Shown here piece by piece: positions 14,922 through 63,269 of a stretch of DNA of 64,000 nucleotides. Source of the stretch: Anolis carolinensis (Eukaryota). The stretch spans positions 8,679,256 through 8,743,255 of the forward strand of contig NC_085842.1 of NCBI RefSeq assembly GCF_035594765.1, given 5' to 3'. The position numbers were made by a program, and so were the translations under genes. Under the pieces are notes generated by a model, which was given only the letters and a program-made list of their open reading frames with translations, was not told the DNA's origin and did not search any database. The stretch's first letter is position 1; each line of letters starts with the position of its first letter.

Positions 14922-16655
14922 TCACATTCCATGCATTTGTGTGGCTTCTCTTCCTGTGTGGGTTCTTTGATGGGTACGTAGACTTGAACTATGACTGAAG
15001 CTGTTTCCACATTCCATGCATTTCTGTGGCTTCTCTCCTGTGTGGGTCCTTTGATGGGAACGCAGATGTTCATTCTGACTGAAGCACTTTCCACATTCCA
15101 TGCATTTATGTGGCTTCTCCCCTGTGTGGGTCCTTTGATGGGAACGCAGGGTTCCACTCTGACTGAAGCTCTTTCCACATTCCATGCATTTATGTGGCTT
15201 CTCTCCTGTGTGGGTCCTTTGATGAATACGCAGACTTGTACTGTGAATGAAGCTCTTTCCACATTCCAAGCAGTTGTGTGGCTTCTCTCCTGTGTGGGTC
15301 CTTTGATGGATATGCAGATGTTGTCTCCTACTGAAGCTCTTTCCGCATTCCATGCATTTATGTGGCTTCTCTCCTGTATGGATCCTTTGATGGATACGAA
15401 AACTTGTACTGTGACTGAAACTCTTTCCACATTCCATGCACTTATGTGGCTTCTCTCCTGTGTGGGTCCTTTGATGGATACGCAGATGTCCACTCTGAAT
15501 GAAGCTCTTTCCACATTGCATGCATTTATGTGGCTTCTCCCCTGTGTGGGTCCTTTGATGGGAATGCAGATGTCCACTCTGACTGAATCTCTTTCCACAT
15601 TCCATGCATTTATGTGGTTTCTCCCCTGTGTGGATCCTTTGATGGGTATGCAGCTGTCCACTCTGACTGAAGCTCTTTCCACATTCCATGCATGTATGTG
15701 GCTTCTCTCCTGTGTGGGTCCTTTGATGGTTACGCAGACCCGCACTGTGACTAAAGTTCTTTCCACATTCTATACATTTATGTGGCTTCTCCCTTGTATG
15801 GATCCTTTGATGTGAATGCAGACTCGCACTCTGACTGAAGCCCTTTCCACATTCTATGCATTTATGTGGCTTCTCCCCTGTGTGGGTCCTTTGATGGGAA
15901 CGCAGGGTTCCACTCTGACTGAAGCTCTTTCCACATTCCATGCATTTATGTGGCTTCTCCCCGGTATGGATCCTTTGATGGGTATGCAGCTGTCCACTGT
16001 GACTAAAGCTCTTTCCACATTCCTTGCATGTATGTGGCTTCTCTCCTGTGTGGGTCCTTTGATGGGAACGCAGACTCCTACAGTGACTGAAGTTCTTTCC
16101 ACATTCCATGCATTTATGTGGCTTTTCCCCTGTATGGATCCTTTGATGGGAATGCAGACTCGCACTCTGACTGAAGCCCTTTCCACATTCTATGCATTTA
16201 TGTGGCTTCTCCCCTGTGTGGGTCTTTTGATGGGAACGCAAATTTCCACTCTGACTGAAGTTCTTTCCACATTCCATACATTTATGTGGCTTCTCTCCTG
16301 TGTGGGTCCTTTGATGGGTATGGAGATCTCCACTTTGACTGAAGCTCTTTCCACATTCAATGCATTTATGTGGCTTCTCCCCTGTGTGCGTCCTTTGATG
16401 GGTACGCAGATGTGAACTCTGACTGAAGCTCTTTGCACATTCCATGCATTTATGTGGCTTCTCCCCTGTGTGCGTCCTTTGATGGGTACGCAGATTCGAT
16501 CTGTTACGGAAGCTCTTTCCACATTCCACGCATGTATGTGACTTCTCTCCTGTGTGAGTTTGTTGATGTTGAGTGAGAGAACTCTTCCCGCAGTCCATAC
16601 AATCGTGTCGCTTCTCCCCTGTGTGTGATCTTGACAAAGAGTTGAGGCTTTCCAT
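14922..16655 (-). CDS. C2H2 zinc-finger gene B1, 577 aa from ATG 16655: 1 deleted plus 19 intact fingers, no effector domain seen
   Basis: Continuous HTGEKP-linked array; ATG in AAAAGAATGG context; the exon starts at 16940 after acceptor TTCTTCTGGCAG. Confidence 0.88.
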
Positions 16656-17658
16656 TCTTTTACAATTATGATTCAAATATTATCCCAGTTCACAGATATG
16701 TTCTCTTGAACAGCACAAGATTTCCTCTTCTTAGTCTTTGTATTGTTGTAGTCTTCTTTCCTCTTTACCAAGCCCCTCTTTTTACAGCACAATCCTCTCT
16801 TTCCTCCTTGAATACACAGGCATGTAGCTTGAAATATAATTTCTCCAGTTTATTTCCAGTTTTTTTCAGTGCTGTGTACTTTCATTTCAGACCCAAGGCA
16901 AAGGGCAGAGTGTTCTTCCCAAGGTTCATTCAGAGGATACCTGCCAGAAGAATGAGAAGACAATCTCATTGGGGCAGAGAAAAGAAAGATCTCACTGGAC
17001 ATGAAGAACAATAGCCTAGTGCTGTAGCAAATGCAGGGGAAGAAGGGGGAAGGATTGCTCCAACTCAGAAAAGCCAATTGCCCAACAAAGGAAAATCCCT
17101 GCTCAGATATAAAGGGGATGGTGGCCCAGGATTCTGTTAATGAGATTGTTTGCTCTGCAATGTGTTAAGAGTGTAATCCTATCACGAAAGTTGAGATAAA
17201 TCACCGTTCTTATCTCAGCTGCTTCTAACGTGCAAGGCACTTCTTGAAGGCATGAAGTTGAATGAACACCAGACTTCACTAATTCAGCCTTCATCAAAAA
17301 GCAGTACTTTGACTTTATTTACAAAATATAGAGCACAGTCTCTAGTCATGTCTGATCACATCTTAACATGCTGGACAAAGCAGACTGACCTTCTTTACTG
17401 GTCAGTACAAGAAATTCCAAAAGTAAGACTCTACCCATTCTGCACATCTCTTATTGTTTTAATCCTTGCATTACTGAAACCATATTGTTTAAACTATAAG
17501 CAATTTTCAGATCACGTAACATTACATACTGACAAATCCAACCTTTGTAAGGGAAGACCTCTAACAATATGGCCAGCACATAATAGGGCTAAGGTTGCAA
17601 AGCATTTCCTGTCTGGATCCCACTTCCTCACACCCCAACTCAGAAGTTGAGTTACCAC

Positions 17659-17731
17659 CTGTATGGAAAGACAATCCCAAGTGATCTGTCTTGGGAGAAA
17701 AGTTCTTCATTGTCTTGTGGATTTTGTCCAG
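17659..17731 (-). other. Candidate small upstream exon of B1 (73 nt)
   Basis: Acceptor TCTTTTTCCTTAG, donor ACAG|GTGGTA; homologous sequence in B2 at ~55636-55698. Confidence 0.45.
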
Positions 17732-18149
17732 CTAAGGAAAAAGATATTTTCAAAAGCAAGGAATCTGGAGACTTTGAAGGCACATTAGGCTGCAGAAGTA
17801 CACTCAGCCTAGAAGCTGTACATGAGAGAAGGGGTGTAGAGGAGGCGGATGGATGGACCCCCAGGGCGAGTGGGAACCCGGCTGCTCTCCAGATGTTTCT
17901 GTACTCCAACTCCCACCAACCCTTCCTTCAGAGAAAGACAAGGGTTATAGTGGGTTGCAGTCCAGCAACACCTGGGGTGGGAGACACAATTCCTGCCCAG
18001 TTCAGCCCATTTTAGAAAGGACATCGACAAACTGCAGCAGATTCAGAGAAAGGCAACAAGGACGAGGAAACATTAAAATTGTAAAGGGAGGTCATTTTGG
18101 TTTTGTAAAAAGTCTGCATTTGCTATGGAGACAATGTTGTGGCCCAAAC

Positions 18150-18530
18150 TAAAGATGATGTTTATGCTATGGCTGAAGGGGTAGGAGGGAAGCCACCAAG
18201 TTCACTGCATCCACTACAGGCCCCTCTTTGGCCCCGGAAGCCCATTTGCAGGGGTTTTATTGAGGATCAGCTGCCAGTTGAGCTGAGACTGTCATCTGGG
18301 TAGTACTAGGGTTGTTTCCTAAGCAGTGCATTGTATAGCTTGTGCCACCAGATAAATGGTCCCCTAATTAACCAGAGGGTTTATTGATCACATTCACAAG
18401 TACCATGGCTTTCTCCTTACAATAATTGCTGATTGTGGGGCCCAATTTGCCTCCTAGTTTTGGAGAGGGCTCTTGAGTCTACTGGGAGGACAGCCAGCTC
18501 CGAGTCCTGCTTGTTGCCCTCAAACATATT
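18150..18530 (+). mobile_element. Degenerate Gypsy-type integrase fragment (paralogous piece at ~63485-63680)
   Basis: Decayed GKPP..LHPL and HKYHGF..IIADCGAQFAS*FWRGL, similar to the integrase core LHG.P..IVSDRG.QF.S.FW. Confidence 0.55.
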
Positions 18531-19049
18531 GGCTATATGCACAGATGTCTATTATATAAAGTAAGTTATGTTATAGTTCTATATTTCTATAGTGATATAG
18601 TCACTTATATATTATGACTGACCGTAACTCCATTCCTGTGGCTTACACAATGAATAATGGTAGACTTATGTATAGTATCAATATCAATATAACAAACCAC
18701 GTATAATCCAATGTCCAATTTCAACAAATATAATTATTGGTACATAAAGTAATCTTATTAAAGTCTTGATAACATTCTCAAGGTTTGTAACACTCTTCTT
18801 CAAAATCAGTCATTCAAAGTAAATCAAAGTTCCATGTCAATGGAAACAAAGAAGGATAACTCCCTGGTTAAAGGAGTATATTGGTGGATTGCAGAGTTTA
18901 TACAGTATATGGATCCCGGAGATAATGTGGTCAATCAAATCGGGTTGATACCAAATCTGGTTGATACGACTGGTCTCCCGGGTATGCATCCAGTTTCGGT
19001 GACCTTCTTCAGATAATCCCGGAGTTCCCTCTGTTTGCTTTAGATAGTA

Positions 19050-19372
19050 CAGTAGAGTCTCACTTATCCAACATTCGCTTATCCAACGTTCTGGATTATC
19101 CAACACATTTTTGTAGTCAATGTTTTCAATACATCATGATATTTAGGTGCTTAATTCGTAAATACAGTAATTACTACATAGCATTACTGCGTATTGAACT
19201 ACATTTTCTGTCAAATTTGTTGTATAACATGAAGTTTTGGTGCTTAATTTGTAAAATCATAACCTAATTTGATGTTTAATAGGCTTTTCCTTAAGCCCTC
19301 CTTATTATCCGACATATTTACTTATCCAACATTCTGCTGGCCCGTTTATGTTGGATAAGTGAGACTCTATTG
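19050..19372. mobile_element. Complete Tc1/mariner (pogo/Tigger-like) MITE, 323 bp
   Basis: TIRs CAGTAGAGTCTCACTTATCCAAC / GTTGGATAAGTGAGACTCTATTG, flanked by TA on both sides. Confidence 0.9.
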
Positions 19373-19516
19373 TATATCTTGATGCTCTGCTGTCTTATTT
19401 CTTCTTATAAAAATAAATATAAAAGAACTATCTAGTACTCTAAGTTCAGTCAAAATAATACAAACCATACTGAAAATAGACATGTATAATACACCCCAAT
19501 AATATCTTATATAGTA

Positions 19517-20033
19517 CTAGCTGTGCCCGGCCACGCGTTGCTGTGGCGTTGTCTGGTGGTGTTGGTGAGAAATTGTCGAGGTAGTGGTGGTATTGAATGT
19601 CTGTTGTTTGGTTGTCTTTATGTTTAGTATGCACACTGAAGTGGATTATATGGCAGTGTGGAGTCAAGATAATCCAGTTCAAAGCAGATAAGATTATAAA
19701 TGGGTTATATAGCTGTGTGGACTGCCATATAATCCAGTTAAAATCTGATAATCTGTGGAAGAGGCCTAAGTGAGGCCTAACTGTGCCTGTCCCCTGGGCT
19801 GAGTAGGTTGCTAGGAGACCAAGTGGGCGGAGCTTAGCCTTCAAACTGGCAGCAATTGGATAAAAACTATTATTCCTCTCCCTGTAATTAAGACTTTATT
19901 TTTCTTTTCTTTTTGTTGTATCAACCTAGAGCCGTGAATGATGGGTTGTGTTGTCAAATTTCGAGGTTGGGGGGCCTGTAGTTTTGTTGTTTTGTCCGCT
20001 GCCCTGATGCCATCACTCTTTTATATATATAGA
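19517..20033 (-). mobile_element. Non-autonomous Helitron, 517 bp
   Basis: Minus strand A|TCTATATATATAAAAGAGTGATGGCATC ... GCCACAGCAACGCGTGGC hairpin, CGGGCACAG, CTAG|T; no target-site duplication (TSD). Confidence 0.88.
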
Positions 20034-20189
20034 TAGATACAAGATTCACAACAAATGAAACTTACATGTCTGTGGAGGATCCTTACATGTAGTATTCTAC
20101 CTCAGGTTGCGAGCATTCAGTAGTAGTTCTGTAAAGACTTAAGTATTTCTAATCCCATTATAAGAAGCAGGTGAAATCTAGCCTATCGT

Positions 20190-20256
20190 TCAGGCCTGGC
20201 TTCCCCAGGCAAGGAGTTCCAGAGCTGAGGGGCATTTGCCACCGAGAAGGAAGGAA

Positions 20257-20290
<34 letters not shown>

Positions 20291-21350
20291 CCCACCAATT
20301 AAGCTTGTGATGGAGGAGGGACTGAGAGAAGGAAGGGCCTCTCCTGAGGGAATCCCAGGGCCCGGGCAGGTTCATACAAGGGGATGCGGTCAGACAAACA
20401 GCCTGGGCCTGAACCATCCAGGGCTTGAAAGCAACAGACTGGCAGCCAGTGGAGGGGGGATGTCTGGTCCCTGCAGCCAGCCCGTTAGCAACCTGGCTTC
20501 ACCTTTTTGGACCAACCGAAGCTTCCAAGCATTCTTCAGAGGCAGCATGTAGAGCGTGTTACAGTCATTCAGGAGGGATGTAACTATGGCGTGGACCACC
20601 ATGGCTAGATCTGGCTTCTCAACGAATGGGCGCAGTTGGCGTGTAAGCATTAATTGAGCAAAGGTCCTCCTGGCCACTGCTGACACCTGGGCCTCCAGGT
20701 TCAAGTCAAGCGGCAGGACAGAAACATCTGGCTATTCCAAAGGGATCCCTGCCTCTTCAATTGGAAACTTCAATTGGTCCAGCGATCGGCAGCCAGACTA
20801 CTAACCGGAGCGAATTACAGGGAGTGGTCAACCCCCTTTAAGGAGCTCCATTGGCTGCCGTTCCTTTTCCGGTCCCAATTCAAGGTGCAGGTCATCACCT
20901 ACAAAGCCCTGAACGCTTTGGGCCCCGCCTTCCTTCGTGACCACACTTCCCCCTATGAACCTACGCGATCTCTTCCATCTTTGGGGAGGACCTTCTCTCG
21001 CTTCTGCCTCCACCACAAGCGCGGCTGGTGGGGACGAGGGAGAGGCCTTCTCCGTGGTGGCCCCTTGGCTCTGGAACTCGCTTCCCAGGGAGATTAGGCA
21101 AGCTCACACCCTGTATGCCTTTAGGAAAATTTTAAAAACTTGGCTTTTCCAGTGTTTTGGGGTTGAATGAATAATTAATCCTCTTATCAATGTTCCTTCC
21201 TTGTTGATTTTATTTTTGAATGAGACTACTGTCTTCCTGATTACCCTATATTTTATCTTGAGCCTTACGTTGAAACTGTATAATTTTTGTCTCTCTATAT
21301 ATTGCACTATGCTCTGACTCATTGTTCTGATATGCTGTTTTATACTGTTT
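20190..21350. mobile_element. Two L2 LINE fragments (~20390-20704 minus; ~20760-21350 plus)
   Basis: LEAQVSAVARRTFAQL..LRPF and VQRSAARLLTGA..FKELHWLP match the L2 C-terminus at 40177-40845. Confidence 0.8.
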
Positions 21351-21361
21351 TATAATAATAA

Positions 21362-21547
21362 CTAGCTGTGCCCGGCCACGCGTTGCTGTGGCTTTTTTTT
21401 AGTGATGTTGGTCAATCTACATTGGGTTTTATTTTTGTTGTGACCATCAACAAAAATTATACAGTATTATTTATTCATTTATTACATTAAAGACATATGA
21501 TAGGATATTACGCTATAACATATACGACTATTTCACAATATTAGTAG

Positions 21548-21595
<48 letters not shown>

Positions 21596-23816
21596 TTGTT
21601 TTGTTATTAGTATTATATTGTAGTGTATTATAATATTATTAGTAGTATTATATGTATATACAATGTATTGTATTATATATGTATTGTATTATTATATATA
21701 TTAATATATTGCAAATTGGCCCCAGAGTACGGAATGGCCTTGTAGTTTCAAAGCTTGGGTGGTTCCGTGTGTTAGAGGGGGGGGAATGCTTTGTTGGGAG
21801 GTGCTAGGTGGTCCTGATTGTTTCCTGGATGGAATTTGTGTGTTTTCAGACTGTTGTTGTTTATTTACTGTGCTGAGATGAGAGAGTGATGAGTACGGAA
21901 TGGCCTTGTAGGTTCAAAGTGTGGGTGGTTTCCTGTGTGAAGGGGGGAATCCTTTGGTGGGAGGTGTTAGATGGCCCTGATTGTTTCCTGGATGGAATAG
22001 CTGTGTTTTTAGAGTGTTGATCTTTATTTACTGTCCTGAGATGATATTGTTGTGTATTATTGTACCACAGTAATTATTTCATATTACAGTAGAATCTCAC
22101 CCAACATTCGTTTATGCAATGTTCTGGATTATGCAATGGAGTCTGCCTTTTAATAGTCAATGTTTTTGGAGTGAGTGTTTTTAATGTATTGTGATATTTT
22201 GGTGGTAAATTTGCAAATACAGTAATTACTACATAGCATTACTGCGCATGGAACTACTTTTTGTGTCAAATTTGTTGTATAACATGATGTTTTGGTGTTT
22301 AATTTGTATAATGATGACCTAATTCGATGTGTAATTGGTTTTCCTGAATCCCTTCTTATTATCCAACATATTTATTTATGCAACGTTCTGCCGGCTTGTT
22401 TATGTTGGATAAGTGAGATTCTAGTGTATATTTATAATGTGATATTATTTGTTTAGAAGTGGATTATATGAGGCGCCTTCTGTTATAACAATAATAATTA
22501 TTATAGTCTTGAATGATTATCATTGTGATAAAAATAATAACTACTTATTATTAGTTGTTATTATATTGTTGAATGATTATCAATGTTATAATAATAATTA
22601 TTAATTTGTGAATGATTATTACTATAATAATAATAATAATTTTCTATTATTACGATTTGTTAATACATTGTTGAATGATTGTCAGTGTTATAATAATAAG
22701 AACTGACTATTATTATGAATTATTATGTTCTCGAATGATTATCAGTATTATACTAATAATAAATTAGTATTATTATTGGTGATTATGACATTCTTAACTG
22801 ATGATCAGTTATTATATTAATAATTATTACAGGGAAGGGAAAGGTGAGGGCGATAGGGTTTGAGAGGGGAAAAAGGGGGGCTTCTGAGGCATTGGAGGGG
22901 TTGTCATTTGTGGGTGAGAACAACAACAACAATAACAACAACAGAAAAGGGGGAAGCTCAGCCTGGGCCAACTGGGGCCTTCCCTTGACTTGTTTTGGGC
23001 GCCAACTTCCACCCTTCCTGGCCTGAGGCTCTTTCCTTTTCCCCATCAGCCGTTTAACCGGGTGAGGGGGAAAAGGAAGGGCCCTGAGGCCGGGAAGGGC
23101 GGGGGGGGGTTGGCGCCCCAAACCACTCGAGGGGAGGTCCAGGCCTGCTCGAGGGCCGTGCCCTCCTCTTCCCCCCTCACCTTGAAGAGCTTGAAGACCT
23201 CCGAGAAGAACCGAGAAGGGAGGAGGAGGAGGAGAGAGGGTGAGGCGGGGGGGGGAGGCTCCGCGGGGCCTTCCTCGCATTGGGGGGAGGGGAGAGGGAC
23301 GGGAGGAGGGGGCCTGAACGGCAACCGGGGCCCTCCATGGGCCCTGAGGGGGGAGGACATTGAGGGGGAGAGGGCAGAGAGCGACGTGAGGCCCGCACGC
23401 CTCCCAGCGCGGCCTCCTCCATCCCGCGCCCAGCAAGGAATCGGCCTCCCTGCCTTCCTTCCTTCAGCTCTGAGGCGAGGTGTGTGTGTGCGCGCGCGGG
23501 AAGGGATGGGGGGGTGCGCGCAGGCGCACATCGCCTGTTGCAGTTTTTGGCCGTTTGTGGCCCTGTGATTGTGTTTGTCCTATAAATCTTACTGGAGCCG
23601 CGCGAGCGCCATAAAGGGTTGAAGCATGGTGTTTTTGCGCATGCGTACTTAGTTTTGGCATTTTTTGGTGTTGTGATAGTGTTTTATGTGTAAATTTGTT
23701 GTATCTTACTGGAGGCGGGGATGATGGATTGCGTTGCCAATTTTCGAGTTTGGGGGGGCTGTAGATTTGTTGTTTTGTCCATCGCCGTGATGCCATCACT
23801 CTTTTATATATATAGA
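21362..23816 (-). mobile_element. Non-autonomous Helitron, 2455 bp, with captured cargo
   Basis: Same 5' TC end and 3' hairpin+CTAG as 19517-20033; inserted at A|T inside the (TAA)n tail of the L2-like fragment that resumes at 23817. Confidence 0.88.
22830..23650 (-). promoter_or_regulatory. CpG-island-like promoter/first-exon cargo inside the Helitron
   Basis: GC/CpG-rich; NRF1-like TGCGCATGCG (23636-23645) and GCGCAGGCGCA (23518-23528); minus-strand donor AAG|GTGAGG at 23180. Confidence 0.55.
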
Positions 23817-25120
23817 TAACTTTATTTTTATACCCCGCCCCAGCTCCCCAAAGGGACTCGGGGCGGCTTACATGGGGCCTGGCCCGATAAAACAAACAAA
23901 TAACAGTAACAAAGCAATAAAACAATTATCCCAGTAAAAAACATCAACATCAATTAAAACAATCATTAAAATCAACAAGCAGGATACAGTGTTAAAAACA
24001 GGAGACTAATGCTGTTAGATGGTCTTATTGTCTATATTGGTTTTAATGTATGACTGTTTATTGTATGTGACATTGGGCTTGTTCCTCATGTGCGCCGCCC
24101 CGAGTCCCCATGGGGGAGATGGGAGCGGGATATAAAAATAAAGTTATTATTATGACAGGTCCCGCCTCAGTGACAATCACTGTATCTGACGCATTTTATT
24201 CTGCTCCATCAGTTGGAAATAATTTCACCGTTTATCCCGCCCCAAGTCTCCCATTAAATGCAGCACTTTACCCATCTTCCTCACCCATTGGGTTTACAAT
24301 ATACACTCCTCGCCCTTTGGCCCAGTTCCTCCTGTTTGATCCTTGATCTGTTTTTTGAATTATGTTCTACTATGCCATTTTTACTCTCTTACTATTTTAC
24401 TATGTTACTGTGTATAATTGTGTTTTTATCTTGATTTTATCTTTTTACTTATTGATGATGCATGCTGTGCATGTATTTTATTTTGTTTTATTGTCATTAC
24501 CTGGGCTTGGCCCCATGTTAGCCGGCCCGAGTCCCTTTGGGGAGATGGAGGTGGGGTAAAAAATAAAGTTGTTGTTGTTGTTGTTATGGTTGGGTAATGG
24601 AGCTGAAGAAGCAGGAGGGGAAATTCAGCACAGAAGAGGAAAAAGGGCTGCACAGGGATATCCTAAGCTAATATAATGGGGCCGAAGAGGCAGGAGAGAA
24701 AATGCAGTAAGTACTTAGGCAGCAGAGGAACATCTGGCTCTTCCAAAGGGATCCCAGTCTCTTTGGGCAAATCAAGGATCAGAGGAGGCAGGGGAGGAAA
24801 CGCAACACAGAAGTTAAAACTTTTTGGGGATTTATTGTAAATGTTGACCCAGCTCGTGTCCATTGCGAATTGTAATTGTGTTAATTTCTTCTGACCACTA
24901 CTAGAGTCATTACAGAAATGTGTCCCAATTATTTTATTCTATAAATTAAATTTCTCACTTGTCACTTTGAGTGGTTTTGTAAGTATATCCCGATGTATGT
25001 GATTTTTATTATCTGAATAGTGTTTATGTTCTATTTCTCAGGCATTGGACGTTTGGTGATTTTTTGTTGCTCACCACCCCGAGTCCCTTTTGGGAGATAG
25101 AGCGGGATAGAAAAAGGTTT
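23817..25120. mobile_element. Cluster of short L2-like 3' tails in both orientations
   Basis: Repeated CCCCGAGTCCC..GGGAGAT..GGG(G)TATAAAAATAAAG(TTA)n motifs at ~23817-24010 (-), ~24020-24152 (+), ~24350-24590 (+) and ~24870-25120 (+). Confidence 0.7.
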
Positions 25121-25222
25121 GGTCTAGGTCAAGTAGAATCATAGAATCATAGAATAGTAGAGTTGGAAGAGACCTCAAGGGCCATCTAGTCCAACCCCCC
25201 GCTAAGAAGCAGGAAATCGCAT

Positions 25223-27962
25223 TCAAAGCACCCCCGACAGATGGCCATCCAGCCTCTGCTTAAAAGCCTCCAAGGAAGGAGCCTCCACCACGGCCCGGGG
25301 GAGAGAGTTCCACTGCCGAACAGCCCTCACAGTGAGGAAGTTCTTCCTGATGTTCAGGTGGAATCTCCTTTCCTGTAGTTTGAAGCCATTGTTCCGTGTC
25401 CTAGTCTGCAGGGCAGCAGAAAATAAGCTTGCTCCCTCCTCCCTATGACTTCCCCTCACATATTTGTACATGGCTATCATGTCTCCTCTCAGCCTTCTCT
25501 TCTGCAGGCTAAACATGCCCAGCTCTTTAAGCCTCTCCTCATAGGGCTTGTTCTCCAGACCCTTAATCATTTTAGTTGCCCTCCTCTGGACGCTTTCCAG
25601 CTTGTCAACATCTCCCTTCATCTGCGGTGCCCAAAACTAGACACAGTATTCCAGGTGTGGTCTGACCAAGGCAGAATAGAGGGGGAGCATGACTTCCCTG
25701 GATCTAGACGTTATTCCCCTATTGATGCAGGCCAAAATCCCATTGGCTTTTTTAGCTGCCGCATCACATTGTAGGCTCATGTTTAACTTGTTGTCCACGA
25801 GGACTCCAAGATCTTTTTCGCACACACTGCTGTCAAGCCAGGCGTCCCCCATTCTGTATCTTTGATTTCCATTTTTTCTGCCGAAGTGAAGTATCTTGCA
25901 TTTGTCCCTGTTGAACTTCATTTTGTTAGTTTCGGCCCATCTCTCTAGTCTGTCAAGATCGTTTTGAATTCTGCTCCTGTCTTCTGGAGTGTTAGCTATC
26001 CCTCCGAGTTTGGTGTCATCTGCAAACTTGATGATCGTGCCTTCTAACCCTTCGTCTAAGTCGTTAATAAAGATGTTGAACAGAACCGGGCCCAGGACGG
26101 AGCCCTGCGGCACTCCACTTGTCACTTCTTTCCATGATGAAGACGACGCATTGGTGAGAATCACCCTTTGGGTTCGTTCGCTTAGCCAATTACAGATCCA
26201 CCTAACCGTAGTTTTGTCTAGCCCACATTTTACTAGTTTGTTTGCCAGAAGGTCGTGGGGGACTTTGTCGAAGGCCTTACTGAAATCTAGATATGCTACA
26301 TCCACGGCATTCCCTGTATCGACCCAACTCGTAACTCTATCGAAAAAAGAGATCAGATTAGTCTGGCATGACTTGTTTTTGGTAAATCCGTGTTGACTAT
26401 TAGCAATGACCGCATTTGTTTCTAAGTGTTTGCAGACCACTTCCTTAATGATCTTTTCCAGAATCTTGCCTGGTATTGATGTGAGGCTGACCGGACGGTA
26501 ATTGTTTGGGTCGTTCTTTTTTCCCTTCTTGAAGATAGGGACCACATTCGCCCTCCTCCAATCTGCTGGGACTTCTCCTGTTCTCCAAGAACTCTCGAAG
26601 ATGATTGCCAGTGGTTCTGAAATAACTTCCGCTAGTTCCTTCAATACTCTTGGATGTAGCTGATCTGGCCCTGGGGACTTGAATTCGTTTAGAGTGGCCA
26701 GGTGTTCCTGGACAACTTGTTTCCCTATTTGGGGTTGGATTTCCCCCAATCCTTCGTCCATTCCATGTTGCTGAGGTTGAAGATGGCTTTCTTTTTGTGA
26801 GAAGACCGAGGCAAAGAAGGCATTAAGCAGTTCTGCCTTTTCCCTATCCCCTGTCACCATCACCCCATCTACTCCTTGCAGTGGCCCTATCGCCTCCTTT
26901 TTCTTCCTTTTTCTACCAACATAAGCAAAAAAAACCTTTTTTGTTGTTTTTTATGTCCCTGGCAAGCCTGAGCTCATTTTGCGCTTTAGCCTTGCGAACC
27001 TTTTCCCTACAGGAGTTGGCTATACGTTTGAATTCTTCTTTGGTGATTTCTCCCCTTTTCCACTTCTTGTGCATGTCACTTTTGAGCTTTAGCTCAGTTA
27101 GAAGTTCTTTGGACATCCATTCTGGCTTCTTTGCACTTGTCTTATTTTTCTTCTTTGTTGGCACTGTTTGCATTTGCGCCTTGAGTATTTCACTTTTGAA
27201 AAACTCCCATCCATCCTTAACTCCCTTGTTTTTTAATATCGGCGTCCATGGAATGCCGCTCAGTAATTCCATCATTTTTTGGAAGTCAGCTCTCTTAAAG
27301 TCCAGAATGCGTGTTTGACTTGTCTTAGTTTCAGCATTCCTTTGTATTGCAAACTGCAGGAGCACATGGTCACTTGCCCCTAAGGATCCAACCACTTCAA
27401 CTGTATTGATCAGGTCTTCCACATTTGTTAAGATTAGATCAAGAGTTGCTGATCCCCTTGTTGCCTCTTCTACCTTCTGGACCATAAAATTATCTGCAAG
27501 GCAAGTGAGGAATTTGTTGGACTTTGTACTCTTGGCTGAGTTTGTTTTCCAGCAGATATCGGGATAATTGAAATCGCCCATGACTACTATATCTCTTCTT
27601 TGTGCCTGTTTGGTCAGCTGTTGACAGAAGGCTTCATCAAGTCCTTCATCCTGACTCGGAGGTCTGTAGTAGACACCCACGACAAGATCTTTTTGAGTCC
27701 CGGTTCCCTTGATTCTTATCCAGATGCTTTCAAGCTGGTTTCCCGGATTACAGTCTTGCATTTCTTCTGCAACGTAACTGTTTTTGACATATAAAGCTAC
27801 TCCCCCTCCTCTCCCCTTTGTTCTATTTATGTGAAAGAGGTTATAGCCCTCAATGGTTAAATTCCAGTGATGGGAGTCATCCCACCAGGTTTCAGTGATG
27901 CCTATGACATCGTATGTGTGGTGCTGTGCTAGGAGTTGGAGTTCGTCTTGCTTATTTCCCAT
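25223..27962 (-). pseudogene. CR1 ORF2 (APE + RT) in three pieces
   Basis: ITETWW, GDFNYP, SDH; [26 protein letters not shown]; split by one frameshift and one stop. Confidence 0.92.
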
Positions 27963-28153
27963 GCTCTGAGCATTAGTGTAAAGACATGTAAGCCCCTGTG
28001 ACCTCCCCTCGAACTGTTTATTTGGGATTATTGTGCTCTCTGTACTTGGTCCTTGCTGTGTTTGTGCAGCCCTCCGTTTAGCCTTACGGCGGTTCCCTGT
28101 GGTCGTGGGTAATATAGTGTTCGCCAGGCTGTTGTTCCCCTCCCCCAGTGGAT

Positions 28154-29425
28154 TTAGTTTAAAGTGCGCCTGATGAGGTTTGTGAGTCTGTGTGCAAAAA
28201 GATGTTTTCCTACTTGTGTGAGATGCACCCCATCGCTTGCCAGTAGTCCATCCTCTTGGAAGAGTAGACCATGGTCAAGGAAGCCAAAATGCTCCTCTTG
28301 ACACCATTTTCTGAGCCAGTTATTGACCTGTACTATTTTTCCGGCCCTTGTAGAGCCATGTCCTACAACGGGGAGGAGGGATGAAAAGATCACATGTACA
28401 TTATACAGTTTTAGCTTTGTTCCCAGAGCTCGAAAATCATTTGTGATCTTTTGAAAAGTATGCCTAGCGGTGTCATTGGTACCTACATGAATCAACATAA
28501 GGTGGGGAGGGTGATGGGGCTTTAGGAGCCTGCTGAGCCTCTGAGTGATATGGTGTATTTTTGCCCCCGGGAGGCAGCATGTTTCTCGAGCCATCCCATC
28601 CGGTCTGGAAATGATGGCTTCCGTTCCTCTAAGGAGGGAGTCACCTACTACCAAGACCTGTTTCCTTTGAGGATTGACAGGGTCCCTTTTGTGCAAGACA
28701 GTGTGTATGTCCCCTGAAGAGTGTTCCTGTTGAAGTGAATCATGTAGGTGTAAAGTGTTGTCCTCCTCCTCAACATCCCCAGTGCATTCATCAATGACAA
28801 TCCATTGAGATACATCCGAGAGCCCATTACTCTCCCAAGGATGTTCCTGTTGCTCCTGGTCTATGATTGGGGGTGGAGCATTTGCATGATTACATAAGTG
28901 TGACTGTGGTGATGCACTGTCCCTGTCAGGGCTATCCCCTGCGCATTGATCCAGGATGGTCCACTGAGTGGTATCTAAGAAACTGTGGTCCTCCACAAGA
29001 TGTGTTTCCTGATTGTATGTTAATGATGTAAGAATTTCAAATCTGTTGTGTAAATGCAGCTGAGCAGAGGAGTTCTGTGGAGGCTGCCTGGTCCTGCGTC
29101 TCCTTCTATGGGTGACCTCCTTCCAAGCCTGAGGGTTGTCTACCTTTGAGTTGATCTCCCCATAAGGTTCCTGATCATGGTCTTGGTGGTGTTGGTGTGA
29201 TGCAGGCTGCTGATCTACAGCAGCGTGTTGTGCAGTGTCCAAGAAGAGCTCGAGTGCCTGAATGTCCTTAAGGGTCTTAATACGGTGCTCGAGCTGTTGG
29301 ATCCTCTGCTCCATCAGAGTCATCTGTTTGCATTTGGAGCAGATGTAGTTGTCTAGTTTTTGTGTGAAAAAGCGGAACATGCCACAGCTGGTGCATGTGA
29401 TGGGAATGTTTTGCTTTTGTTGCAT
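28154..29425 (-). CDS. CR1 ORF1p (Cys4 motif, coiled coil, SGNH esterase), 423 aa
   Basis: CTSC..CSKC; VVGDSLL, HVGTND and DGVH esterase blocks. Confidence 0.9.
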   Translation of the reverse strand: MQQKQNIPITCTSCGMFRFFTQKLDNYICSKCKQMTLMEQRIQQLEHRIKTLKDIQALELFLDTAQHAAVDQQPASHQHHQDHDQEPYGEINSKVDNPQAWKEVTHRRRRRTRQPPQNSSAQLHLHNRFEILTSLTYNQETHLVEDHSFLDTTQWTILDQCAGDSPDRDSASPQSHLCNHANAPPPIIDQEQQEHPWESNGLSDVSQWIVIDECTGDVEEEDNTLHLHDSLQQEHSSGDIHTVLHKRDPVNPQRKQVLVVGDSLLRGTEAIISRPDGMARETCCLPGAKIHHITQRLSRLLKPHHPPHLMLIHVGTNDTARHTFQKITNDFRALGTKLKLYNVHVIFSSLLPVVGHGSTRAGKIVQVNNWLRKWCQEEHFGFLDHGLLFQEDGLLASDGVHLTQVGKHLFAHRLTNLIRRTLN

Positions 29426-30026
29426 CTCTTGGTGAGCGTGGTGGCCAAGTGGGATCTTTGTACAGTTAAGTAATATGCACGCACTTTATGTGCAGACTGC
29501 AACAAACCACGTCTTTGTGTATTTGTTTATGTTGCTTTGTTTCCTGTATGTACTGCAAAGGATAGTTAGTAAAGGTGCCTTTTTCTTCTGCGAGAACCAA
29601 CTGCCCTTCTGGGATCAGGCTCTGGCAGAAACTCACACTGGCAAATAAAGCTTTCCCAGAAACTCAATTAACAGGGGACAATGCCTGCTGTCAATCAACT
29701 TAAGTACCTGGCTCTCTTTCAACACAACAGTCACACAACAGTTAGACTTTGACCACAGGAGCCAAGCCCAAACTCAGTTTAAAATCTTAGCCAAATCTTA
29801 GCCAAATCCTACCTGAAGCCAGGGAGCAAAAATGTCCTCCTGCTTCCTCTGCTTCTGCGAGAACCAACTGCCCTTCTGGGATCAGGAGGACAGGGTTTGC
29901 TGTGAGTCTGCCCCAGAAGCAAGCAGACATGGCTGAAGGTTGATCCATAAAGGAATGAGGAGAGTAAAGAACGACAGAGCTGGTTGAAGATGAAAAGCCC
30001 CTCCCACGCCATGCGTTCTCCCTGGA

Positions 30027-32099: not shown

Positions 32100-33108
32100 C
32101 TCCCAGGGCTTTCCTTGCAGAGTGTGCCGGGCCCTCCCTCCCTCCCTCCCTCCTCTCTCTCAGAGAGCACAGAGTCCACACAGAGACCCGCGTCTGCACT
32201 GCGCTCTAACCCGGTTCAAGGCGGCTGGTTTGGGTTTCCTCTGGCAGTGAAGGAAGGAATGAGAGAGGGAGGGAGGCGCATGCGCAGTGGCGCCGCCACG
32301 GGCCCAGAGGGCAGAGCAGGCCGCAGCCTCACCAGGGCAGACCGGGCCCCGACCGGGAGGGAGGCAGGCCCGTGAGCAGAGGCAGAGCCCGGGCGGAGGG
32401 CAAGGCGCGGGGGGCAAACTCGGAGACCCACACAGCCCCCCACTCGCACTCGCACTCGCACTCACCCTCTCCTCAGCTTTCTTCTTCTCTCTCCGAAAGG
32501 CCTTTCCTTCCTCCTCCGGAAGTGAGCTCACAGGGAAAGGCGCCGGCCCGTCTCCGCTCTAGGAAAGGCCTCCTTTTCTCGGTGGACTTCCGCCCGGGCC
32601 TAACATGGCAGCCGCGGGCAGGATGCCCATAGAGGGGCGGGGCTTCTCGGCAGTTGAACGGAGCCCGACACAGACAGACAGAGAGAGACGCTCCTCCGTT
32701 CTTTGCCGCAAAACGTCCAATGGGAATCCGCCTCCCTCCCTGACGTCATCAGTCTCCGGGCAGAATCTCCCCCGGCCCTTTCCTTCCCCGTTCGGTCATT
32801 AACGGTCATTCCCGGGACCCGCCCATGGGGATCGGCCCCCGCTCGAGGAAGCGGGAAAGGGAGGGCCAGGCCAGGAAGGAAGGAAGGAAGGATTGAGGGG
32901 TCGTGTCGGGGAAGCAGCCTCCTCCGGCCTCCTCCAGACGGTGTTTCCCTGCTGCCTAATGTGTCGCTTCAGAACCTGAAGTGTAGCTCTGACGGGATTG
33001 GGAGTTTCCTCCTCTCCCTAGACCCAGAGACGTGGGCGGGGTCACGTGAGTGGCCGAGGGACCGTTGGGAAGGCCGAGGCCTCATCCGGGTGAAGGAAGG
33101 GCGCTGAG
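32100..33108. promoter_or_regulatory. CpG-island bidirectional promoter between B1 and A2, with divergent non-coding first exons
   Basis: NRF1 GCGCATGCGCA 32276, ETS CCGGAAGT 32516, GC box 32634, CCAAT 32717, CRE TGACGTCA 32741, E-box GTCACGTG 33041; minus donor AGG|GTGAGT at 32465 and plus donor GAG|GTAAGA at 33109. Confidence 0.72.
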
Positions 33109-50241: not shown

Positions 50242-52561
<2,320 letters not shown>

Positions 52562-52948
52562 TCTTTTACATTTATGATTCAAATATTATGCCGGAAGTTC
52601 ACAGATATGTACTACTAAGCAAGACGTGATTTCCTCTTCTCAGTCTGTATTGTTGTAGCCTTCTTTTCTCTTTACCAAGCCTCTCTTTTCACAGCACAAT
52701 CCTCCCTTTCCTCCTTGAATAAACAGATATGTAACTTGGAATATAATTTCTCCAACTTATTTCTTGTTCTTGCCAGTGCTGTGTACGTTCATTTCACAGC
52801 TAAGGCAAAGGCCAAAGTGTTCTTCCCAAGGTTCATTCAGAGGTTACCTGCCAGAAGAATGAGAGGAAAATCTTATCAGGAGCAGAGCACAGAAAGGTCT
52901 CATTGGACATGAAGAACAGTAACCTAATGCTGTAGCAAGCACAAGAGA

Positions 52949-53093
52949 NNNNNNNNNNNNNNNNNNNNNNNNNNNNNNNNNNNNNNNNNNNNNNNNNNNN
53001 NNNNNNNNNNNNNNNNNNNNNNNNNNNNNNNNNNNNNNNNNNNNNNNNNNNNNNNNNNNNNNNNNNNNNNNNNNNNNNNNNNNNNNNNNNNNN
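52949..53093. other. Assembly gap (N run)
   Basis: Ns in the sequence. Confidence 1.
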
Positions 53094-53438
53094 NCTCGGG
53101 GTGGCTTACAACGAGAATATGACAACAACATAGCATATACTACACACGATCCACTAAAACAATGAGATTTAAAAACAATGCAATACAAGATAAAACAACA
53201 TAATAATTACTTAAAAAACCAGAATATCAAATTGTTCTGCACAGCAGAGGGTGACTAATACATCATTCCACCAGGTCCAAGAATAGAATCAAAATGAGTA
53301 AAGAAGGAACAAGGGAACAATTTCACTTAAAATGCTATACCATGTAGAGTGAGGACAAGATAAAGTGCCATTAAGGTTGTAAACATAGAGTAGATTCCAA
53401 GTCAGATGGGCTATTTGTTCAAACACGCTCCGGAACAT

Positions 53439-54540
53439 GGGGGAAATGGCTATCTCTAGGTCGGTTTACCCTTTAATTATACCTCAAACCCCAAAGTAAA
53501 TACTCTTGAAGATGGTTAAAAATAACCAAAAATATATTTATTGAACACAGGAAACAGTCCTTTTATTGTATTAGAAATAATATGAGGTAAAATCACTGAA
53601 ATTATACAGAAATAAAACTATGGATAGAGAATGAAGGTTATACAGACTATAAAGAATAAACACACAAGCTATGAGGAAACTATAAGGTAAGGACTATAGG
53701 GTACGTACAAGGCTATGATAAGCACTATATGACTCTGAGGTAAACTATTAGCTATGCTCTTGGTAAGTACATAAGCTATGGTGAACTATAAGGTAAGTAT
53801 GTGAGGTAAGTACATGAGGCAAATACAAGACTATGAGGTAAACTATAAGCTCTATCTATAATGACTTAAGTGGTAAATACCAGCTATAGTGAACTATCTA
53901 TAATAACTCTGAGGTAAACTATAAGGTGATAAGCTATAAGGTAAGTACCAGCTTTGCTATCTATGAGTCTGAGGTAAACTATAAGCTCTATCTATAATAA
54001 CTTAAGTGGTAAATACGAGGTGAACTATAAGCTTTGCTATCTTTGAGGTAAATACGAGGTGGTAAGTACATAAGGCTATGATGTGACTATAAGGTAAGTA
54101 CGTGAGGTAAGTACATGAGGTAAATACAAGACTATGAGGTAAGTCCGAGGCTATGGTAAACTATCTATAATAACTATGTGGTGGTAAGTACGTGATTTAT
54201 GTTGCCTGTTTGAATTTGCCAGGTCAAAGAACCCAGACCAAATTCTAAGACCTATCTCTAAGAGGTTTTTCTCTGGAATGCCAAATGAGAGGAAAAAGCC
54301 TCCAGACCAGGGGTCCCCAAACTTTTTAAGCAGGGGGCCAGTTCACAATCCTTCGGACCGTTGGAGGACCGGACTATAGTTGGCCACCAAGCAATAAATA
54401 ATAATAATAATAATAATAGCAATAATAATAAAAAGAGGGTTGGAAGAGACCCTTTGGGCCATTGAGTCCAATCCCCTTCTGCCTTTGTGAACCGAAAGCA
54501 CAAGCAAAGCACCCCTGACAGATGGCCACCCAGCCTCAAT

Positions 54541-54592
<52 letters not shown>

Positions 54593-54851
54593 GCAATAAT
54601 AATTTTAAAAGGGTTGGAAGAGACCCTTTGGGCCACTGAGTCCAACCCCTTTCTGCCTTTGTGCACCAAAAACACAAGCAAAGCACCCCTGACAGATGGC
54701 CACCCAGCCTCAATGTTAATAATAATAATAATAATAATTAATAAAGAGGGTTGGAAGAGACACCTTGGGCCATTAAGTCCAACCCTCGTCTGCCTCTGTG
54801 CACCAAAAGCACAAGCAAAGCACCCCTGACAGATGGCCACCCAGCCTTAAT

Positions 54852-54895
<44 letters not shown>

Positions 54896-55178
54896 GGGTT
54901 GTAAGAGAAGAAGAGACCCCTTGGGTCATTTAGCCCAACCCCCTTCTGCCCTTGTGCCATGGGGGCCGGATGAATGGCTTCGATGGGCCGCATCCGGCCC
55001 CCGGGCCTTAGTTTGGGGACCCCTGCTCCAGAGCCTAGCTCACAGGCTGAACCATCTCATCCAAACCTACAGGGGAGTCCCAAGCCCCACCCCCAAAACA
55101 GGAGCCAATGGAACATTCCACCCAAGAACAGCAAAGCAGGAAATAAGCCGGGGATAGGAACCCAGTAAGACAGCACAA
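53439..55178 (-). mobile_element. LTR-like insertion with an AT-rich GAGGTAAACTATAAG-type minisatellite (~53640-54200), inside an L2 fragment
   Basis: Minus-strand start TGTCTTAC at 55172 and AATAAA near 53540; flanked by a 48-bp direct repeat. Confidence 0.45.
54308..55025. mobile_element. hAT MITE, 718 bp, containing a tandem array of CR1-tail-derived units
   Basis: TIRs CAGGGGTCCCCAAACT / AGTTTGGGGACCCCTG; TSD CTCCAGAC / CTCCAGAG. Confidence 0.88.
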
Positions 55179-56181
55179 TAGATTCCAAGTCAGATGGGCT
55201 ATTTATTCAAACACGCTCCGGAACATCCATGTCTTCAGTTGACGATGAAAGATGGGCAATGACGGAGCTAACCCGATCTCCCTGGGGAGAGTTCCAAAGC
55301 CAGGGGGCCACCACCGAGAAGGCTCTCTCCCTCGTGCCCGCCAGCCGCATTCGAGGCAGGGGCGGGAGCGAGAGAAGAGCCTCATCAGATGGTCTTAAGG
55401 CTCGTGTAGGTTCATAGGGGGAGGAGGCCCAACAAAGGACAGTCTCTGTAAAAAAGATAGTCTCCCAAGATTCTGTGTGTGAGATTATTAGCACTGCCAT
55501 GTGTTACAAGTGTAATCCAACCTTTATAAAGGAAGACCCCTAACAATATGGTCAGCACAGAAAGGGGCTAAGGTTGCAAAGCATTTCCTGCCTAGATCCT
55601 GCTTCCTCACATCCCAACTCAGAACTTCAGTGACCACCTGTATGGACAGGCCATCCCAAATGATCAGTCCTGGGAGAAACATATTTCATTGTCTTGTGTA
55701 GATTTTATGAATTTTAATGTTTTGAATTTTAATTATGTATGTGTACGGTTGTAAATTTGTTGTTTTTATCATTTCATATTTATGTATTATCTATACGCGG
55801 CAGTTTACTATATTTTGTTGGGCGCCCCAAGTTCCTTCGGGGAGATGGTGCTGGGGTAGAAACAAAATTTATTATTACTATCATTATTATTTCTTCCAAC
55901 CTGGAGACACTGAGAGCACATTAGGCCACAAAATTCCTTGACATATTGCATTCTTATAAAACCTATATCACAAAGGTATGTAACCTCAGGCAGAACAAAT
56001 GCAAAGAGAAAAACAAAGGAAAATGCAAACTTCTACACCAAGACCACAAAAACAGAGATAGAGATGCAGAGGCTCAGGGTGGAAAACACCCAGCCTAGAG
56101 GCAATACATGAGAAAGGAGGTGTAGAGGAGATGGATGGATGGACCCCGAGGGCGAGTGGGGACTCTGCTGGCCTTCAGAAG

Positions 56182-57462: not shown

Positions 57463-58787
57463 TAATAATAAGAAGGCCTGATCCTTGCAGCCCAGGAGCA
57501 AGCCATCAGAACAAATGCAATCAAGGCCAAGATCGAAAAATCAGCTGATGACCCAAAGTGCAGACTGTGCAAGGAAACCGACGAAACCATTGATCATCTC
57601 CTCAGCTGCTGTAAGAAAATTGCACAGACAGACTACAAACAGAGGCACAACTATGTGGCCCAAATGATTCATTGGAACCTATGCCTCAAGTATCACCTCC
57701 CTGCAGTTAAGAACTGGTGGGATCACAAACCTGCAAAGGTTGTGGAAAACGAACACGCAAAGATACTGTGGGACTTCCGAATTCAGACTGACAAAGTTCT
57801 GGAACACAACACACCAGACATCACAGTTGTGGAAAAGAACAAGGTTTGGATCATTGATGTTGCCATCCCAGGTGACAGTCACATTGAAGAAAAACAACAG
57901 GAAAAACTCAGCCGCTATCAGGACCTCAAGATTGAACTCCAAAGACTCTGGCAGAAACCAGTGCAGGTGGTCCCGGTGGTGATGGGCACACTGGGTGCCG
58001 TGCCAAAAGATCTCAGCTGGCATTTGGAAACAATAGACATTGACAAAATTACGATCTGCCAACTGCAAAAGGCCACCTTACAGAGCCTGATCCCAGAAGG
58101 GCAGTTGGTTCTCGCAGAAGCAGAGGCAGCAGGAGGACATTTTTGCTCCCTGGCTTCAGGTAGGATTTGGCTAAGATTTGGCTAAGATTTTAAACTGAGT
58201 GTGGGCTTGGCTCCTGTGGTCAAAGTCTAACTGTTGTGTGACTGTTGTGTTGAAAGAGAGCCAGGTACTTAAGTTGATTGACAGCAGGCATTGTCCCCTG
58301 TTAATTGAGTTTCTGGGAAAGCTTTATTTGCCAGTGTGAGTTTCTGCCAGAGCCTGATCCCAGAAGGGCAGTTGGTTCTCGCAGAAGCAGAGGCAGCAGG
58401 AGGACATTTTTGCTCCCTGGCTTCAGGTAGGATTTGGCTAAGATTTGGCTAAGATTTTAAACTGAGTGTGGGCTTGGCTCCTGTGGTCAAAGTCTAACTG
58501 TTGTGTGACTGTTGTGTTGAAAGAGAGCCAGGTACTTAAGTTGATTGACAGCAGGCATTGTCCCCTGTTAATTGAGTTTCTGGGAAAGCTTTATTTGCCA
58601 GTGTGAGTTTCTGCCAGAGCAGAAAGAAAGAAAGGCACCTTTACTAACTATCCTTTGCAGTAAATACAGGAAACAAAGCAACATAAACAAATACACAAAG
58701 AGGTGGTTTGTTGCAGTTTGCACATAAAGTGCGTGCATATTACTTAACTGTACAAAGATCCCACTTGGCCACCACGCTCACCAAGAG

Positions 58788-60059: not shown

Positions 60060-60250
60060 ATCCACTGGGGGAGGGGAAAAACAGCCTGGCGAACAATATA
60101 TTACCCACGACCACAGGGAACCGCCGAAAGGCTAAATGGAGGGCTGCACAAACACAGCAAGGACCAAGTACAGAGAGCACAATAATCCCAAATAAACAGT
60201 TCGAGAGGAGGTCACAGGGGCTTACATGTCTTTACACTAATGCTCAGAGC

Positions 60251-62989: not shown

Positions 62990-63221
62990 ATGCGATTTCC
63001 TGCTTCTTAGCAGGGGGTTGGACTAGATGGCCCATGTAGTCTCTTCCAACTCTACTATTCTATGATTCTATGATTCTATGATTCTATACTGGGATCTGCA
63101 CGCACCATCCGAAAATACATCACACAGTCCTAGACACTTGGGAAGTGTTCGACCTGGGATTTTGTGAAACGAAATCCAGCATATCTATCTTGTTTGCTGT
63201 GTCATACAACGTTGTTGTGTC

Positions 63222-63269
<48 letters not shown>

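What the first reader, a model, noticed from the sequence alone, without database searches (positions are those of the whole stretch)
21362..23816. Helitron carrying a captured CpG-island promoter and first exon, in sense orientation upstream of B1
Seen: the termini match the 517-bp Helitron at 19517-20033, but this copy is 2455 bp. Read 5'->3' on the minus strand, the cargo is NRF1-like motifs (23645, 23528), a GC/CpG-rich block with an ATG at 23422 open for ~80 codons up to donor AAG|GTGAGG (23180), then an abrupt change to AT-rich intron-like DNA, a decayed mariner MITE (22087-22426) and a 166-bp tandem repeat (21725/21891). Known: Helitrons capture host fragments and can spread promoters. 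Inference: this is a mobile promoter/exon-1 cassette taken from another gene that could give B1 an alternative start ~6 kb upstream of its finger exon. Splicing to 17731 or 16940 would not fuse in frame with the fingers, so it would act as an alternative 5'UTR/uORF.
Basis: partly seen in the sequence, partly recalled or inferred. Interest (0 to 1): 0.85.

Follow-up and report, generated by a model that had tools for sequence, protein, structure and literature searches.

The report
Lizard Helitron carrying decayed kinase exon
A 2.5-kb rolling-circle transposon (Helitron), present in tens of near-identical copies in an anole lizard genome, carries a decayed gene-start fragment that looks like the first coding exon of a TESK kinase; this is a known kind of event, I found no sign that it drives the neighbouring zinc-finger gene, and the odd part is that its cargo has lost G bases on one strand only.

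Summary
The element is real: a 2455-bp non-autonomous Helitron (TC...CTAG, 3' hairpin, inserted A|T in a SINE-like tail). Several first-reader details need correcting. The informative frame is not the ATG at 23422: the phase-0 frame ends FFSEVFK(LFK) at the donor, a motif of TESK1/TESK2 kinases, so the cargo is probably a decayed TESK first coding exon plus intron start (donor locus not retrieved). Both NRF1-like sites lie in a duplicated ~115-bp leader unit. The AT-rich part is a minisatellite. Near-identical contigs stand at 300-700x against about 5-13x for B1 intron DNA, so the whole composite is a young multi-copy family. It probably sits in intron 1 of B1, whose own promoter is likely the CpG island at 32.3-33.0 kb. 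No splice joint or exon enrichment was seen, but the test was weak. The captured MITE lost 21 of 60 G on the Helitron top strand (outside copies 19 of 171, p=1e-4); other bases are unaffected. The scan noted both the TESK capture and the G loss before, on other DNA of this genome. Closest known case: bat HelibatN3/NUBPL.

The parts
21362..23816 (-). non-autonomous Helitron, whole composite element, 2455 bp
   Evidence: multi-copy by contig depth
23695..23816 (-). 5' terminus starting TC, shared with the 517-bp Helitron (85%, first 29 nt identical)
23606..23719 (-). leader unit 1, with NRF1-like site 23637-23646
23492..23602 (-). leader unit 2, diverged copy of unit 1, with NRF1-like site 23518-23527; other copies keep 9 nt that this copy lacks at 23585
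   Evidence: score 67, best of 2000 shuffles 44; table 4
23181..23490 (-). CpG-rich, C-skewed exon-like cargo; decayed, probably 5' UTR and first coding exon of a TESK kinase (5' border approximate)
23190..23210 (-). codons for FFSEVFK, followed by a 9-nt imperfect duplication (23181-23189, LFK)
   Evidence: motif in TESK1/TESK2 only among 497 kinase domains
23175..23180 (-). splice donor GTGAGG, start of captured intron
22975..23140 (.). 166-bp imperfect inverted repeat (hairpin), origin unknown
22490..22824 (.). AT-rich minisatellite (periods 39, 60-63, 102)
22081..22431 (.). captured Tc1/mariner MITE with the terminal repeat of TcMar-N7/N8_AC; strand-specific G loss
21725..22044 (.). two tandem copies (166-bp spacing) of a fragment of a very high-copy repeat; recalled from memory as Penelope/Poseidon-like, not tested
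21362..21412 (-). 3' terminus: hairpin 21375-21392, then 13 nt ending CTAG; last 31 nt identical to the 517-bp element
23817..23899 (-). SINE-like repeat whose A/T tail is split by the insertion (A|T, no duplication); tail continues at 21361
19517..20033 (-). 517-bp non-autonomous Helitron of the same end family
14922..16655 (-). B1 C2H2 zinc-finger reading frame (577 aa), wholly inside the last exon
32251..33000 (.). CpG island with NRF1-like site (32276) and a minus-strand donor at 32465; likely the shared native promoter of B1 and the SCAN gene A2 (inferred)

Best explanation
A non-autonomous Helitron lineage of an anole lizard picked up, as DNA, the 5' end of a TESK-type kinase gene (first coding exon, donor, start of intron 1), and also a hairpin, a minisatellite, a mariner MITE and a piece of another repeat. 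The cargo decayed while it was carried, mainly by loss of G on the element's top strand. The finished composite was then copied in trans to tens of near-identical copies. One landed between A and T in a SINE tail in what is probably intron 1 of B1, in sense orientation, where it is a passenger. Shown: ends, target site, anatomy, many near-identical copies, G loss in the MITE, no fusion frame. Inferred: the TESK donor, the intronic position, the lack of use as a promoter, and mobilisation by an autonomous RepHel partner.
For: Ends and target. TESK-like end: FFSEVFK directly before the donor region; chance at a fixed place 3e-10 to 3e-12; FFSEV occurs only in TESK1 and TESK2 in the 497-kinase file (PMC6930252); the four codons before it differ from I-G-S-G codons by four changes, all to C (compared by eye). 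Multi-copy: contigs with 0-4 other letters at depth 319-713 in two deep runs (one labelled DNA?, one unlabelled) against about 5-13 on B1 intron DNA; one 630-nt contig joins MITE, minisatellite and hairpin edge. G loss: 21/60 against 19/171 outside, p=1e-4; non-G 16/257 against 60/826, p=0.68. All four splice routes stop before the fingers. Bias to capture 5' gene ends is published for bats and Xenopus (PMC4224331, PMC12001565).
Against: The donor locus was not retrieved: protein searches with the cargo frame found nothing, so the TESK call rests on 7-11 codons plus earlier unchecked notes. That TESK genes have an intron after this lysine is my own knowledge. Contig depth is a rough measure of copy number. 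Silence is not shown: only contigs were available and 423 joints were not listed.
Confidence: 0.7

Rival explanations
1. One reading: the cassette is a working mobile promoter, and this copy gives B1 an alternative first exon (5' UTR with upstream reading frames), like bat HelibatN3/NUBPL insertions.
For: Sense orientation; intact donor (the only [ACG]AG|GT[AG]AG site between 16900 and 33000 on this strand); two NRF1-like sites; CpG o/e 0.8; precedent PMC4778049. B1's reading frame lies wholly in its last exon, so a new 5' exon would not truncate it.
Against: No joint from 23181 among those listed; depth of the GC block against the AT block is 1.6-1.8 in RNA-labelled runs and 1.5-2.7 in the two deep runs, so no exon enrichment. 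CpG richness is expected of a young copy and says nothing of activity here. Such a transcript would carry 8-11 upstream ATGs. In bats only 3 transcripts had a start inside the insertion (PMC4778049).
Confidence: 0.12
2. The GC block is the Helitron's own promoter and leader exon (native, or captured long ago and adopted by the autonomous element to express RepHel); the kinase likeness is chance or a relic.
For: NRF1-like sites are in a duplicated unit that begins inside the Helitron's shared 5' end; the block is multi-copy; PMC3014272 describes anole non-autonomous Helitrons as deletion derivatives of autonomous ones.
Against: The TESK peptide at the donor is hard to get by chance; the 517-bp relative lacks the block; other cargo is plainly captured (MITE).
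Confidence: 0.12
3. The insertion acts on B1 without being a promoter: as a cassette exon or a premature poly(A) site inside intron 1 that lowers B1 output.
For: Sense donor; six AATAAA in sense orientation downstream of the donor inside the element.
Against: No acceptor for the exon was identified, no junction seen; AATAAA is expected in such AT-rich DNA.
Confidence: 0.06

Closest known systems
HelibatN3 carrying the NUBPL promoter, first exon and donor (Myotis; PMC4224331, PMC4778049)
   Same: Non-autonomous Helitron with TC and CTAG ends, a gene 5' fragment with splice donor and intron start, amplified to many copies; can in principle trap downstream exons when inserted in sense in an intron.
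   Different: Lizard, TESK-like donor, tens rather than a thousand copies; cargo heavily decayed and G-depleted; promoter part not traced to the donor; no transcript shown.
Anolis carolinensis non-autonomous Helitrons, Helitron-2N2 to 2N5_AC (PMC3014272)
   Same: Size class (about 2 kb; 550 bp for 2N4, like the 517-bp neighbour), young and multi-copy; 2N3 is a composite with fragments of other repeats.
Heli1Xen1 gene-fragment captures in Xenopus laevis (PMC12001565)
   Same: Captured coding fragments come mostly from gene 5' ends (17 of 19) and are amplified several-fold.
   Different: Frog; other donors; no strand-specific decay in the passages I read.
TcMar-N7_AC / N8_AC mariner MITEs (PMC3014272)
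   Same: Terminal repeat matches the free copies in the window with 0-3 mismatches; length near 330 bp fits N7.
   Different: The copy inside the Helitron is 12% diverged, with the excess entirely at top-strand G.

Membership tests
Helitron (Helitron1 type), non-autonomous | 5' TC terminus | tested here: met
   starts TC at 23816
Helitron (Helitron1 type), non-autonomous | 3' CTRR terminus | tested here: met
   ends CTAG at 21362
Helitron (Helitron1 type), non-autonomous | short palindrome just upstream of the 3' end | tested here: met
   18-nt hairpin 21375-21392, 13 nt from the end
Helitron (Helitron1 type), non-autonomous | insertion between A and T without target duplication | tested here: met
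   joined flanks rebuild the SINE tail seen in free copies near 63265 and 39866
Helitron (Helitron1 type), non-autonomous | dispersed copies showing mobility as a unit | tested here: met
   near-identical contigs at 319-713x against about 5-13x; shared ends with 19517-20033; flanks of other copies not seen
Helitron (Helitron1 type), non-autonomous | no RepHel coding capacity | tested here: met
   no RepHel motif and no ORF above 217 aa in the element
Helitron (Helitron1 type), non-autonomous | ends shared with an autonomous RepHel partner (Helitron-1_AC or -2_AC) | not testable with these tools
Helitron gene 5'-end capture (HelibatN3/NUBPL type) | exon end with splice donor and intron start, i.e. 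capture as DNA | tested here: met
   FFSEVFK(LFK) then GTGAGG
Helitron gene 5'-end capture (HelibatN3/NUBPL type) | alignment to a non-Helitron donor locus | not testable with these tools
   no TESK sequence could be had by reference; searches with the decayed frame blank
Helitron gene 5'-end capture (HelibatN3/NUBPL type) | captured piece includes the donor's promoter | tested here: inconclusive
   NRF1-like sites lie in a duplicated leader unit overlapping the Helitron 5' end
Helitron gene 5'-end capture (HelibatN3/NUBPL type) | drives chimeric transcripts at the new site | tested here: inconclusive
   no joint listed, no exon enrichment; contigs only, acceptors 17658 and 16940 outside the stretch laid
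TESK1/TESK2 kinase first coding exon | Gly-loop peptide I-G-[AS]-G-F-F-S-E-V-[YF]-K | tested here: inconclusive
   7 of 11 residues exact to TESK2 (FFSEVFK), S kept, I/G/G reachable by four changes to C; the rest of the exon not alignable without a reference; TESK1 against TESK2 unresolved
TcMar-N7/N8_AC MITE | terminal repeat given in PMC3014272 Table 2 | tested here: met
   2 mismatches at 22407-22426; 79% to the free copy 19044-19377

The most novel reading that the evidence does not exclude
Anole Helitrons impose their own strand-specific mutation on whatever they carry: G on the top strand goes to A or C (C to T or G on the bottom strand, as cytosine deamination followed by abasic-site bypass would give) during rounds of rolling-circle copying. 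This would be a replication footprint of a DNA transposon that I found in no paper, would hide the origin of captured genes, and could count transposition rounds. The lesser novel reading, that this copy is a working second promoter of B1, I put at about 0.12.
Probability: 0.5. Interest if true: 0.7.

Novelty: new member of a known kind. Interest (0 to 1): 0.4.

Why it matters
The capture itself extends a pattern known from bats, Xenopus and maize to anole lizards and to a TESK-type kinase; I found no paper on Helitron with TESK1. Alone that is modest. If copies of this family act as promoters they would be a ready, young set of natural exon traps. The one-strand G loss matters more: it points to a mutagenic step in Helitron replication or to a host deaminase acting on it, and it is directly testable on the many copies in this genome and with the existing Helraiser assay.

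Tried and rejected
Protein searches with the phase-0 cargo frame: homologs, representatives, Pfam, PDB, Atlas, exact look-up: all blank; uninformative for a decayed fragment and under the length limit. DNA patterns for the exon end and the Helitron 3' end in metagenome and viral contigs: none. B1 protein not on record, so no annotated gene start was obtained; one search gave generic zinc-finger proteins. An Anolis sagrei locus (L001) shares repeats at 70-90% with the window but holds no copy of the cargo. Paper searches for the peptide, Helitron with TESK1, Helitron with APOBEC or strand bias, and TESK exon structure gave nothing relevant. Rejected: ATG 23422 as the donor's frame; AT-rich part as plain intron; an in-frame fusion with the fingers; a paralogous empty site in B2 (the matching part of B2's intron is not in the window). 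A TpC (APOBEC-like) context for G>C was only borderline (6/21 against 3/39, p=0.054). Left out: a search with the published TESK kinase sequences (no reference id, human, not typed) and any search with a joined spliced model; frames were only counted locally. The N run at 52949-53094 was not touched.

Full report
Setting. The window is a cluster of C2H2 zinc-finger genes: SCAN-KRAB genes A1 and A2 on the plus strand, finger arrays B1 (14922-16655) and B2 on the minus strand. It is most likely from an anole lizard: its mariner MITEs carry exactly the terminal repeat published for TcMar-N7/N8 of Anolis carolinensis, and its repeats are 70-90% like those of an Anolis sagrei locus. The species is inferred, not shown.

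The element. 21362-23816 on the minus strand begins TC and ends CTAG, with an 18-nt hairpin 13 nt before the end. Its first 122 nt are 85% and its last 51 nt 88% identical to the 517-bp element at 19517-20033. Joining the flanks rebuilds the A/T tail of a SINE-like repeat as seen in free copies, so it inserted between A and T with no duplication. It has no RepHel motif or long frame. It meets the tested features of a non-autonomous Helitron (definition in PMC2997563).

Anatomy, 5' to 3'. After the shared end come two diverged copies of a ~115-bp unit (23719-23606 and 23602-23492; score 67 against a best of 44 in 2000 shuffles). Other genomic copies keep 9 nt at 23585 that make unit 2 more like unit 1 (table 4). 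Each unit holds one of the NRF1-like sites at the matching position. The sites are real, but unit 1 starts inside the Helitron's shared end, so they cannot simply be counted as captured promoter. Then follows the CpG-rich exon-like block and the donor at 23180, about 350 bp of GC-rich DNA with a 166-bp hairpin (z -5.0), an AT-rich minisatellite, a MITE (22081-22431), two tandem copies of a fragment of a very abundant repeat, AT-rich DNA and the 3' end.

What the exon is. The phase-0 frame ends ...PSRFFSEVFKLFK at the donor; LFK is a 9-nt imperfect duplication. Earlier notes of the scan on other copies suggested TESK1. I checked the motif: in the sequence file of 497 human kinase domains FFSEV occurs twice, in TESK1 and TESK2 (PMC6930252). 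The chance of these seven codons at a fixed place is 3e-10 to 3e-12; allowing about 1e5 phase-0 exon ends in a vertebrate (my estimate) leaves it below 1e-4. The four codons before it differ from codons for I-G-S-G, as in TESK2, by four changes, all to C (by eye). From my own knowledge, TESK genes have an intron after this lysine and in TESK1 this exon is the CpG-island first exon. The letters fit human TESK2 better, the context TESK1; I leave that open. I could not fetch the donor: every search with the decayed frame was blank, and the published sequences have no reference here, so that search was left out.

Copy number. Public runs of the organism hold 59-80% of the words of 22830-23816, including contig sets of only 7-9 million letters. 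Laid on 17660-23659, contigs with 0-4 other letters cover the tandem pair's edge, MITE, minisatellite, hairpin and GC block at depth 491-605 (X13) and 319-713 (X6), against about 5-13 for non-repeat B1 intron DNA. One 630-nt contig joins MITE, minisatellite and hairpin edge. The tool warns that depth is no copy number; I read it only as tens of copies. So the composite, decay included, was amplified recently as a unit.

Position relative to B1. A CpG island at 32251-33000 with an NRF1-like site and a minus-strand donor at 32465 lies just before the SCAN exon of A2. It is the natural shared promoter of B1 and A2, which would put the Helitron, its small relative and a young CR1 LINE (25134-29886) in intron 1 of B1. 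This is inference; no transcript or annotation was obtained. B1's fingers are read from an ATG inside the last exon, with six stops upstream in that frame; all four routes from 23181 stop before it and carry 8-11 upstream ATGs (one search had one exon border off by one base, corrected). The AG at 17731 is not kept in B2, whereas a candidate exon 17658-17543 is.

Is it used? Only contigs were available. No joint from 23181 is among the 15 listed (423 not shown). The two RNA-labelled runs cover introns and repeats like DNA, and the GC block is not enriched over the AT block compared with the deep runs (1.6-1.8 against 1.5-2.7). Acceptors 17658 and 16940 lay outside the 6000 letters laid. So there is no support for promoter use, and no proof of silence. 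CpG richness is expected in a young copy.

One-strand G loss. Against the majority base of six free copies in the window, the captured MITE changed 21 of 60 top-strand G (12 to A, 9 to C) but 3 of 45 C (p=8e-4). Free copies changed 19 of 171 G (p=1e-4); at other bases inside and outside are alike (16/257 against 60/826). In the hairpin, A-C mismatches outnumber G-T 8 to 1 (p=0.04); 11 of 20 differences between the tandem copies involve G, which is 11% of their bases; the changes in the TESK-like codons go to C. The many copies share the G-poor state, so it arose before the last burst. My inferred mechanism is damage to bottom-strand cytosines while one strand is exposed during rolling-circle copying, fixed as C>T and C>G; the TpC context is only borderline (p=0.054). 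Error-prone synthesis or selection on the mobile strand are not excluded. The lead came from s1-517356; I found no paper on it.

Comparison and verdict. Helitron capture of promoter, first exon and intron start, with amplification and occasional chimeric transcripts, is established for bat HelibatN3/NUBPL and 14 other promoters (PMC4224331, PMC4778049), and 5'-biased capture for Xenopus (PMC12001565). Anole Helitrons of this size are described, without gene capture (PMC3014272). This is a new member of that kind. The regulatory story is unsupported (about 0.12). The G loss is the part a specialist would want to follow. Interest 0.4.

Noticed in passing
window 22975-23140: 166-bp imperfect hairpin right after the captured donor (z -5.0); origin unknown: fold-back at a capture junction or another small element.
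   Followed up: partly
window 19517-20033: Contigs go from the 5' end back to the 3' end of the small Helitron (20022 to 19516) in two runs, as head-to-tail arrays or circles of the family would; others skip it whole (19516 to 20043).
   Followed up: no
window 22456-22470 and 19638-19652: 15-nt exact match between the interiors of the large and small Helitron; contigs join 22481 to 19629 in all four runs, so relatives exist with the large element's 5' part and the small one's 3' part.
   Followed up: no
window 25134-29886 (-) and 58086-63078 (+): Two near full-length CR1 LINE copies, 96-99% alike, with esterase ORF1 and endonuclease/RT ORF2, in the introns of B1 and B2 in opposite orientation.
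   Followed up: partly
window 32251-33000: CpG island between divergent B1 and A2; the head-to-head unit seems tandemly repeated (A1/A2 offset about 33 kb, B1/B2 about 36 kb).
   Followed up: partly
window 16655-17731 and 52500-55750: B1 and B2 have no recognisable KRAB or SCAN exon in the window; the region upstream of the finger ATG is 84-86% alike between them but full of stops, so both look like finger-only genes.
   Followed up: partly
window 21183-21353: A 90%-alike contig of the 3' flank stops matching 8 bases short of the element and goes on unlike it, as an empty paralogous site would (X11 record 4).
   Followed up: no
window 40251-43000: Further CpG-rich stretches coincide with an endonuclease/RT LINE frame (40812-43178), not with a gene start.
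   Followed up: no
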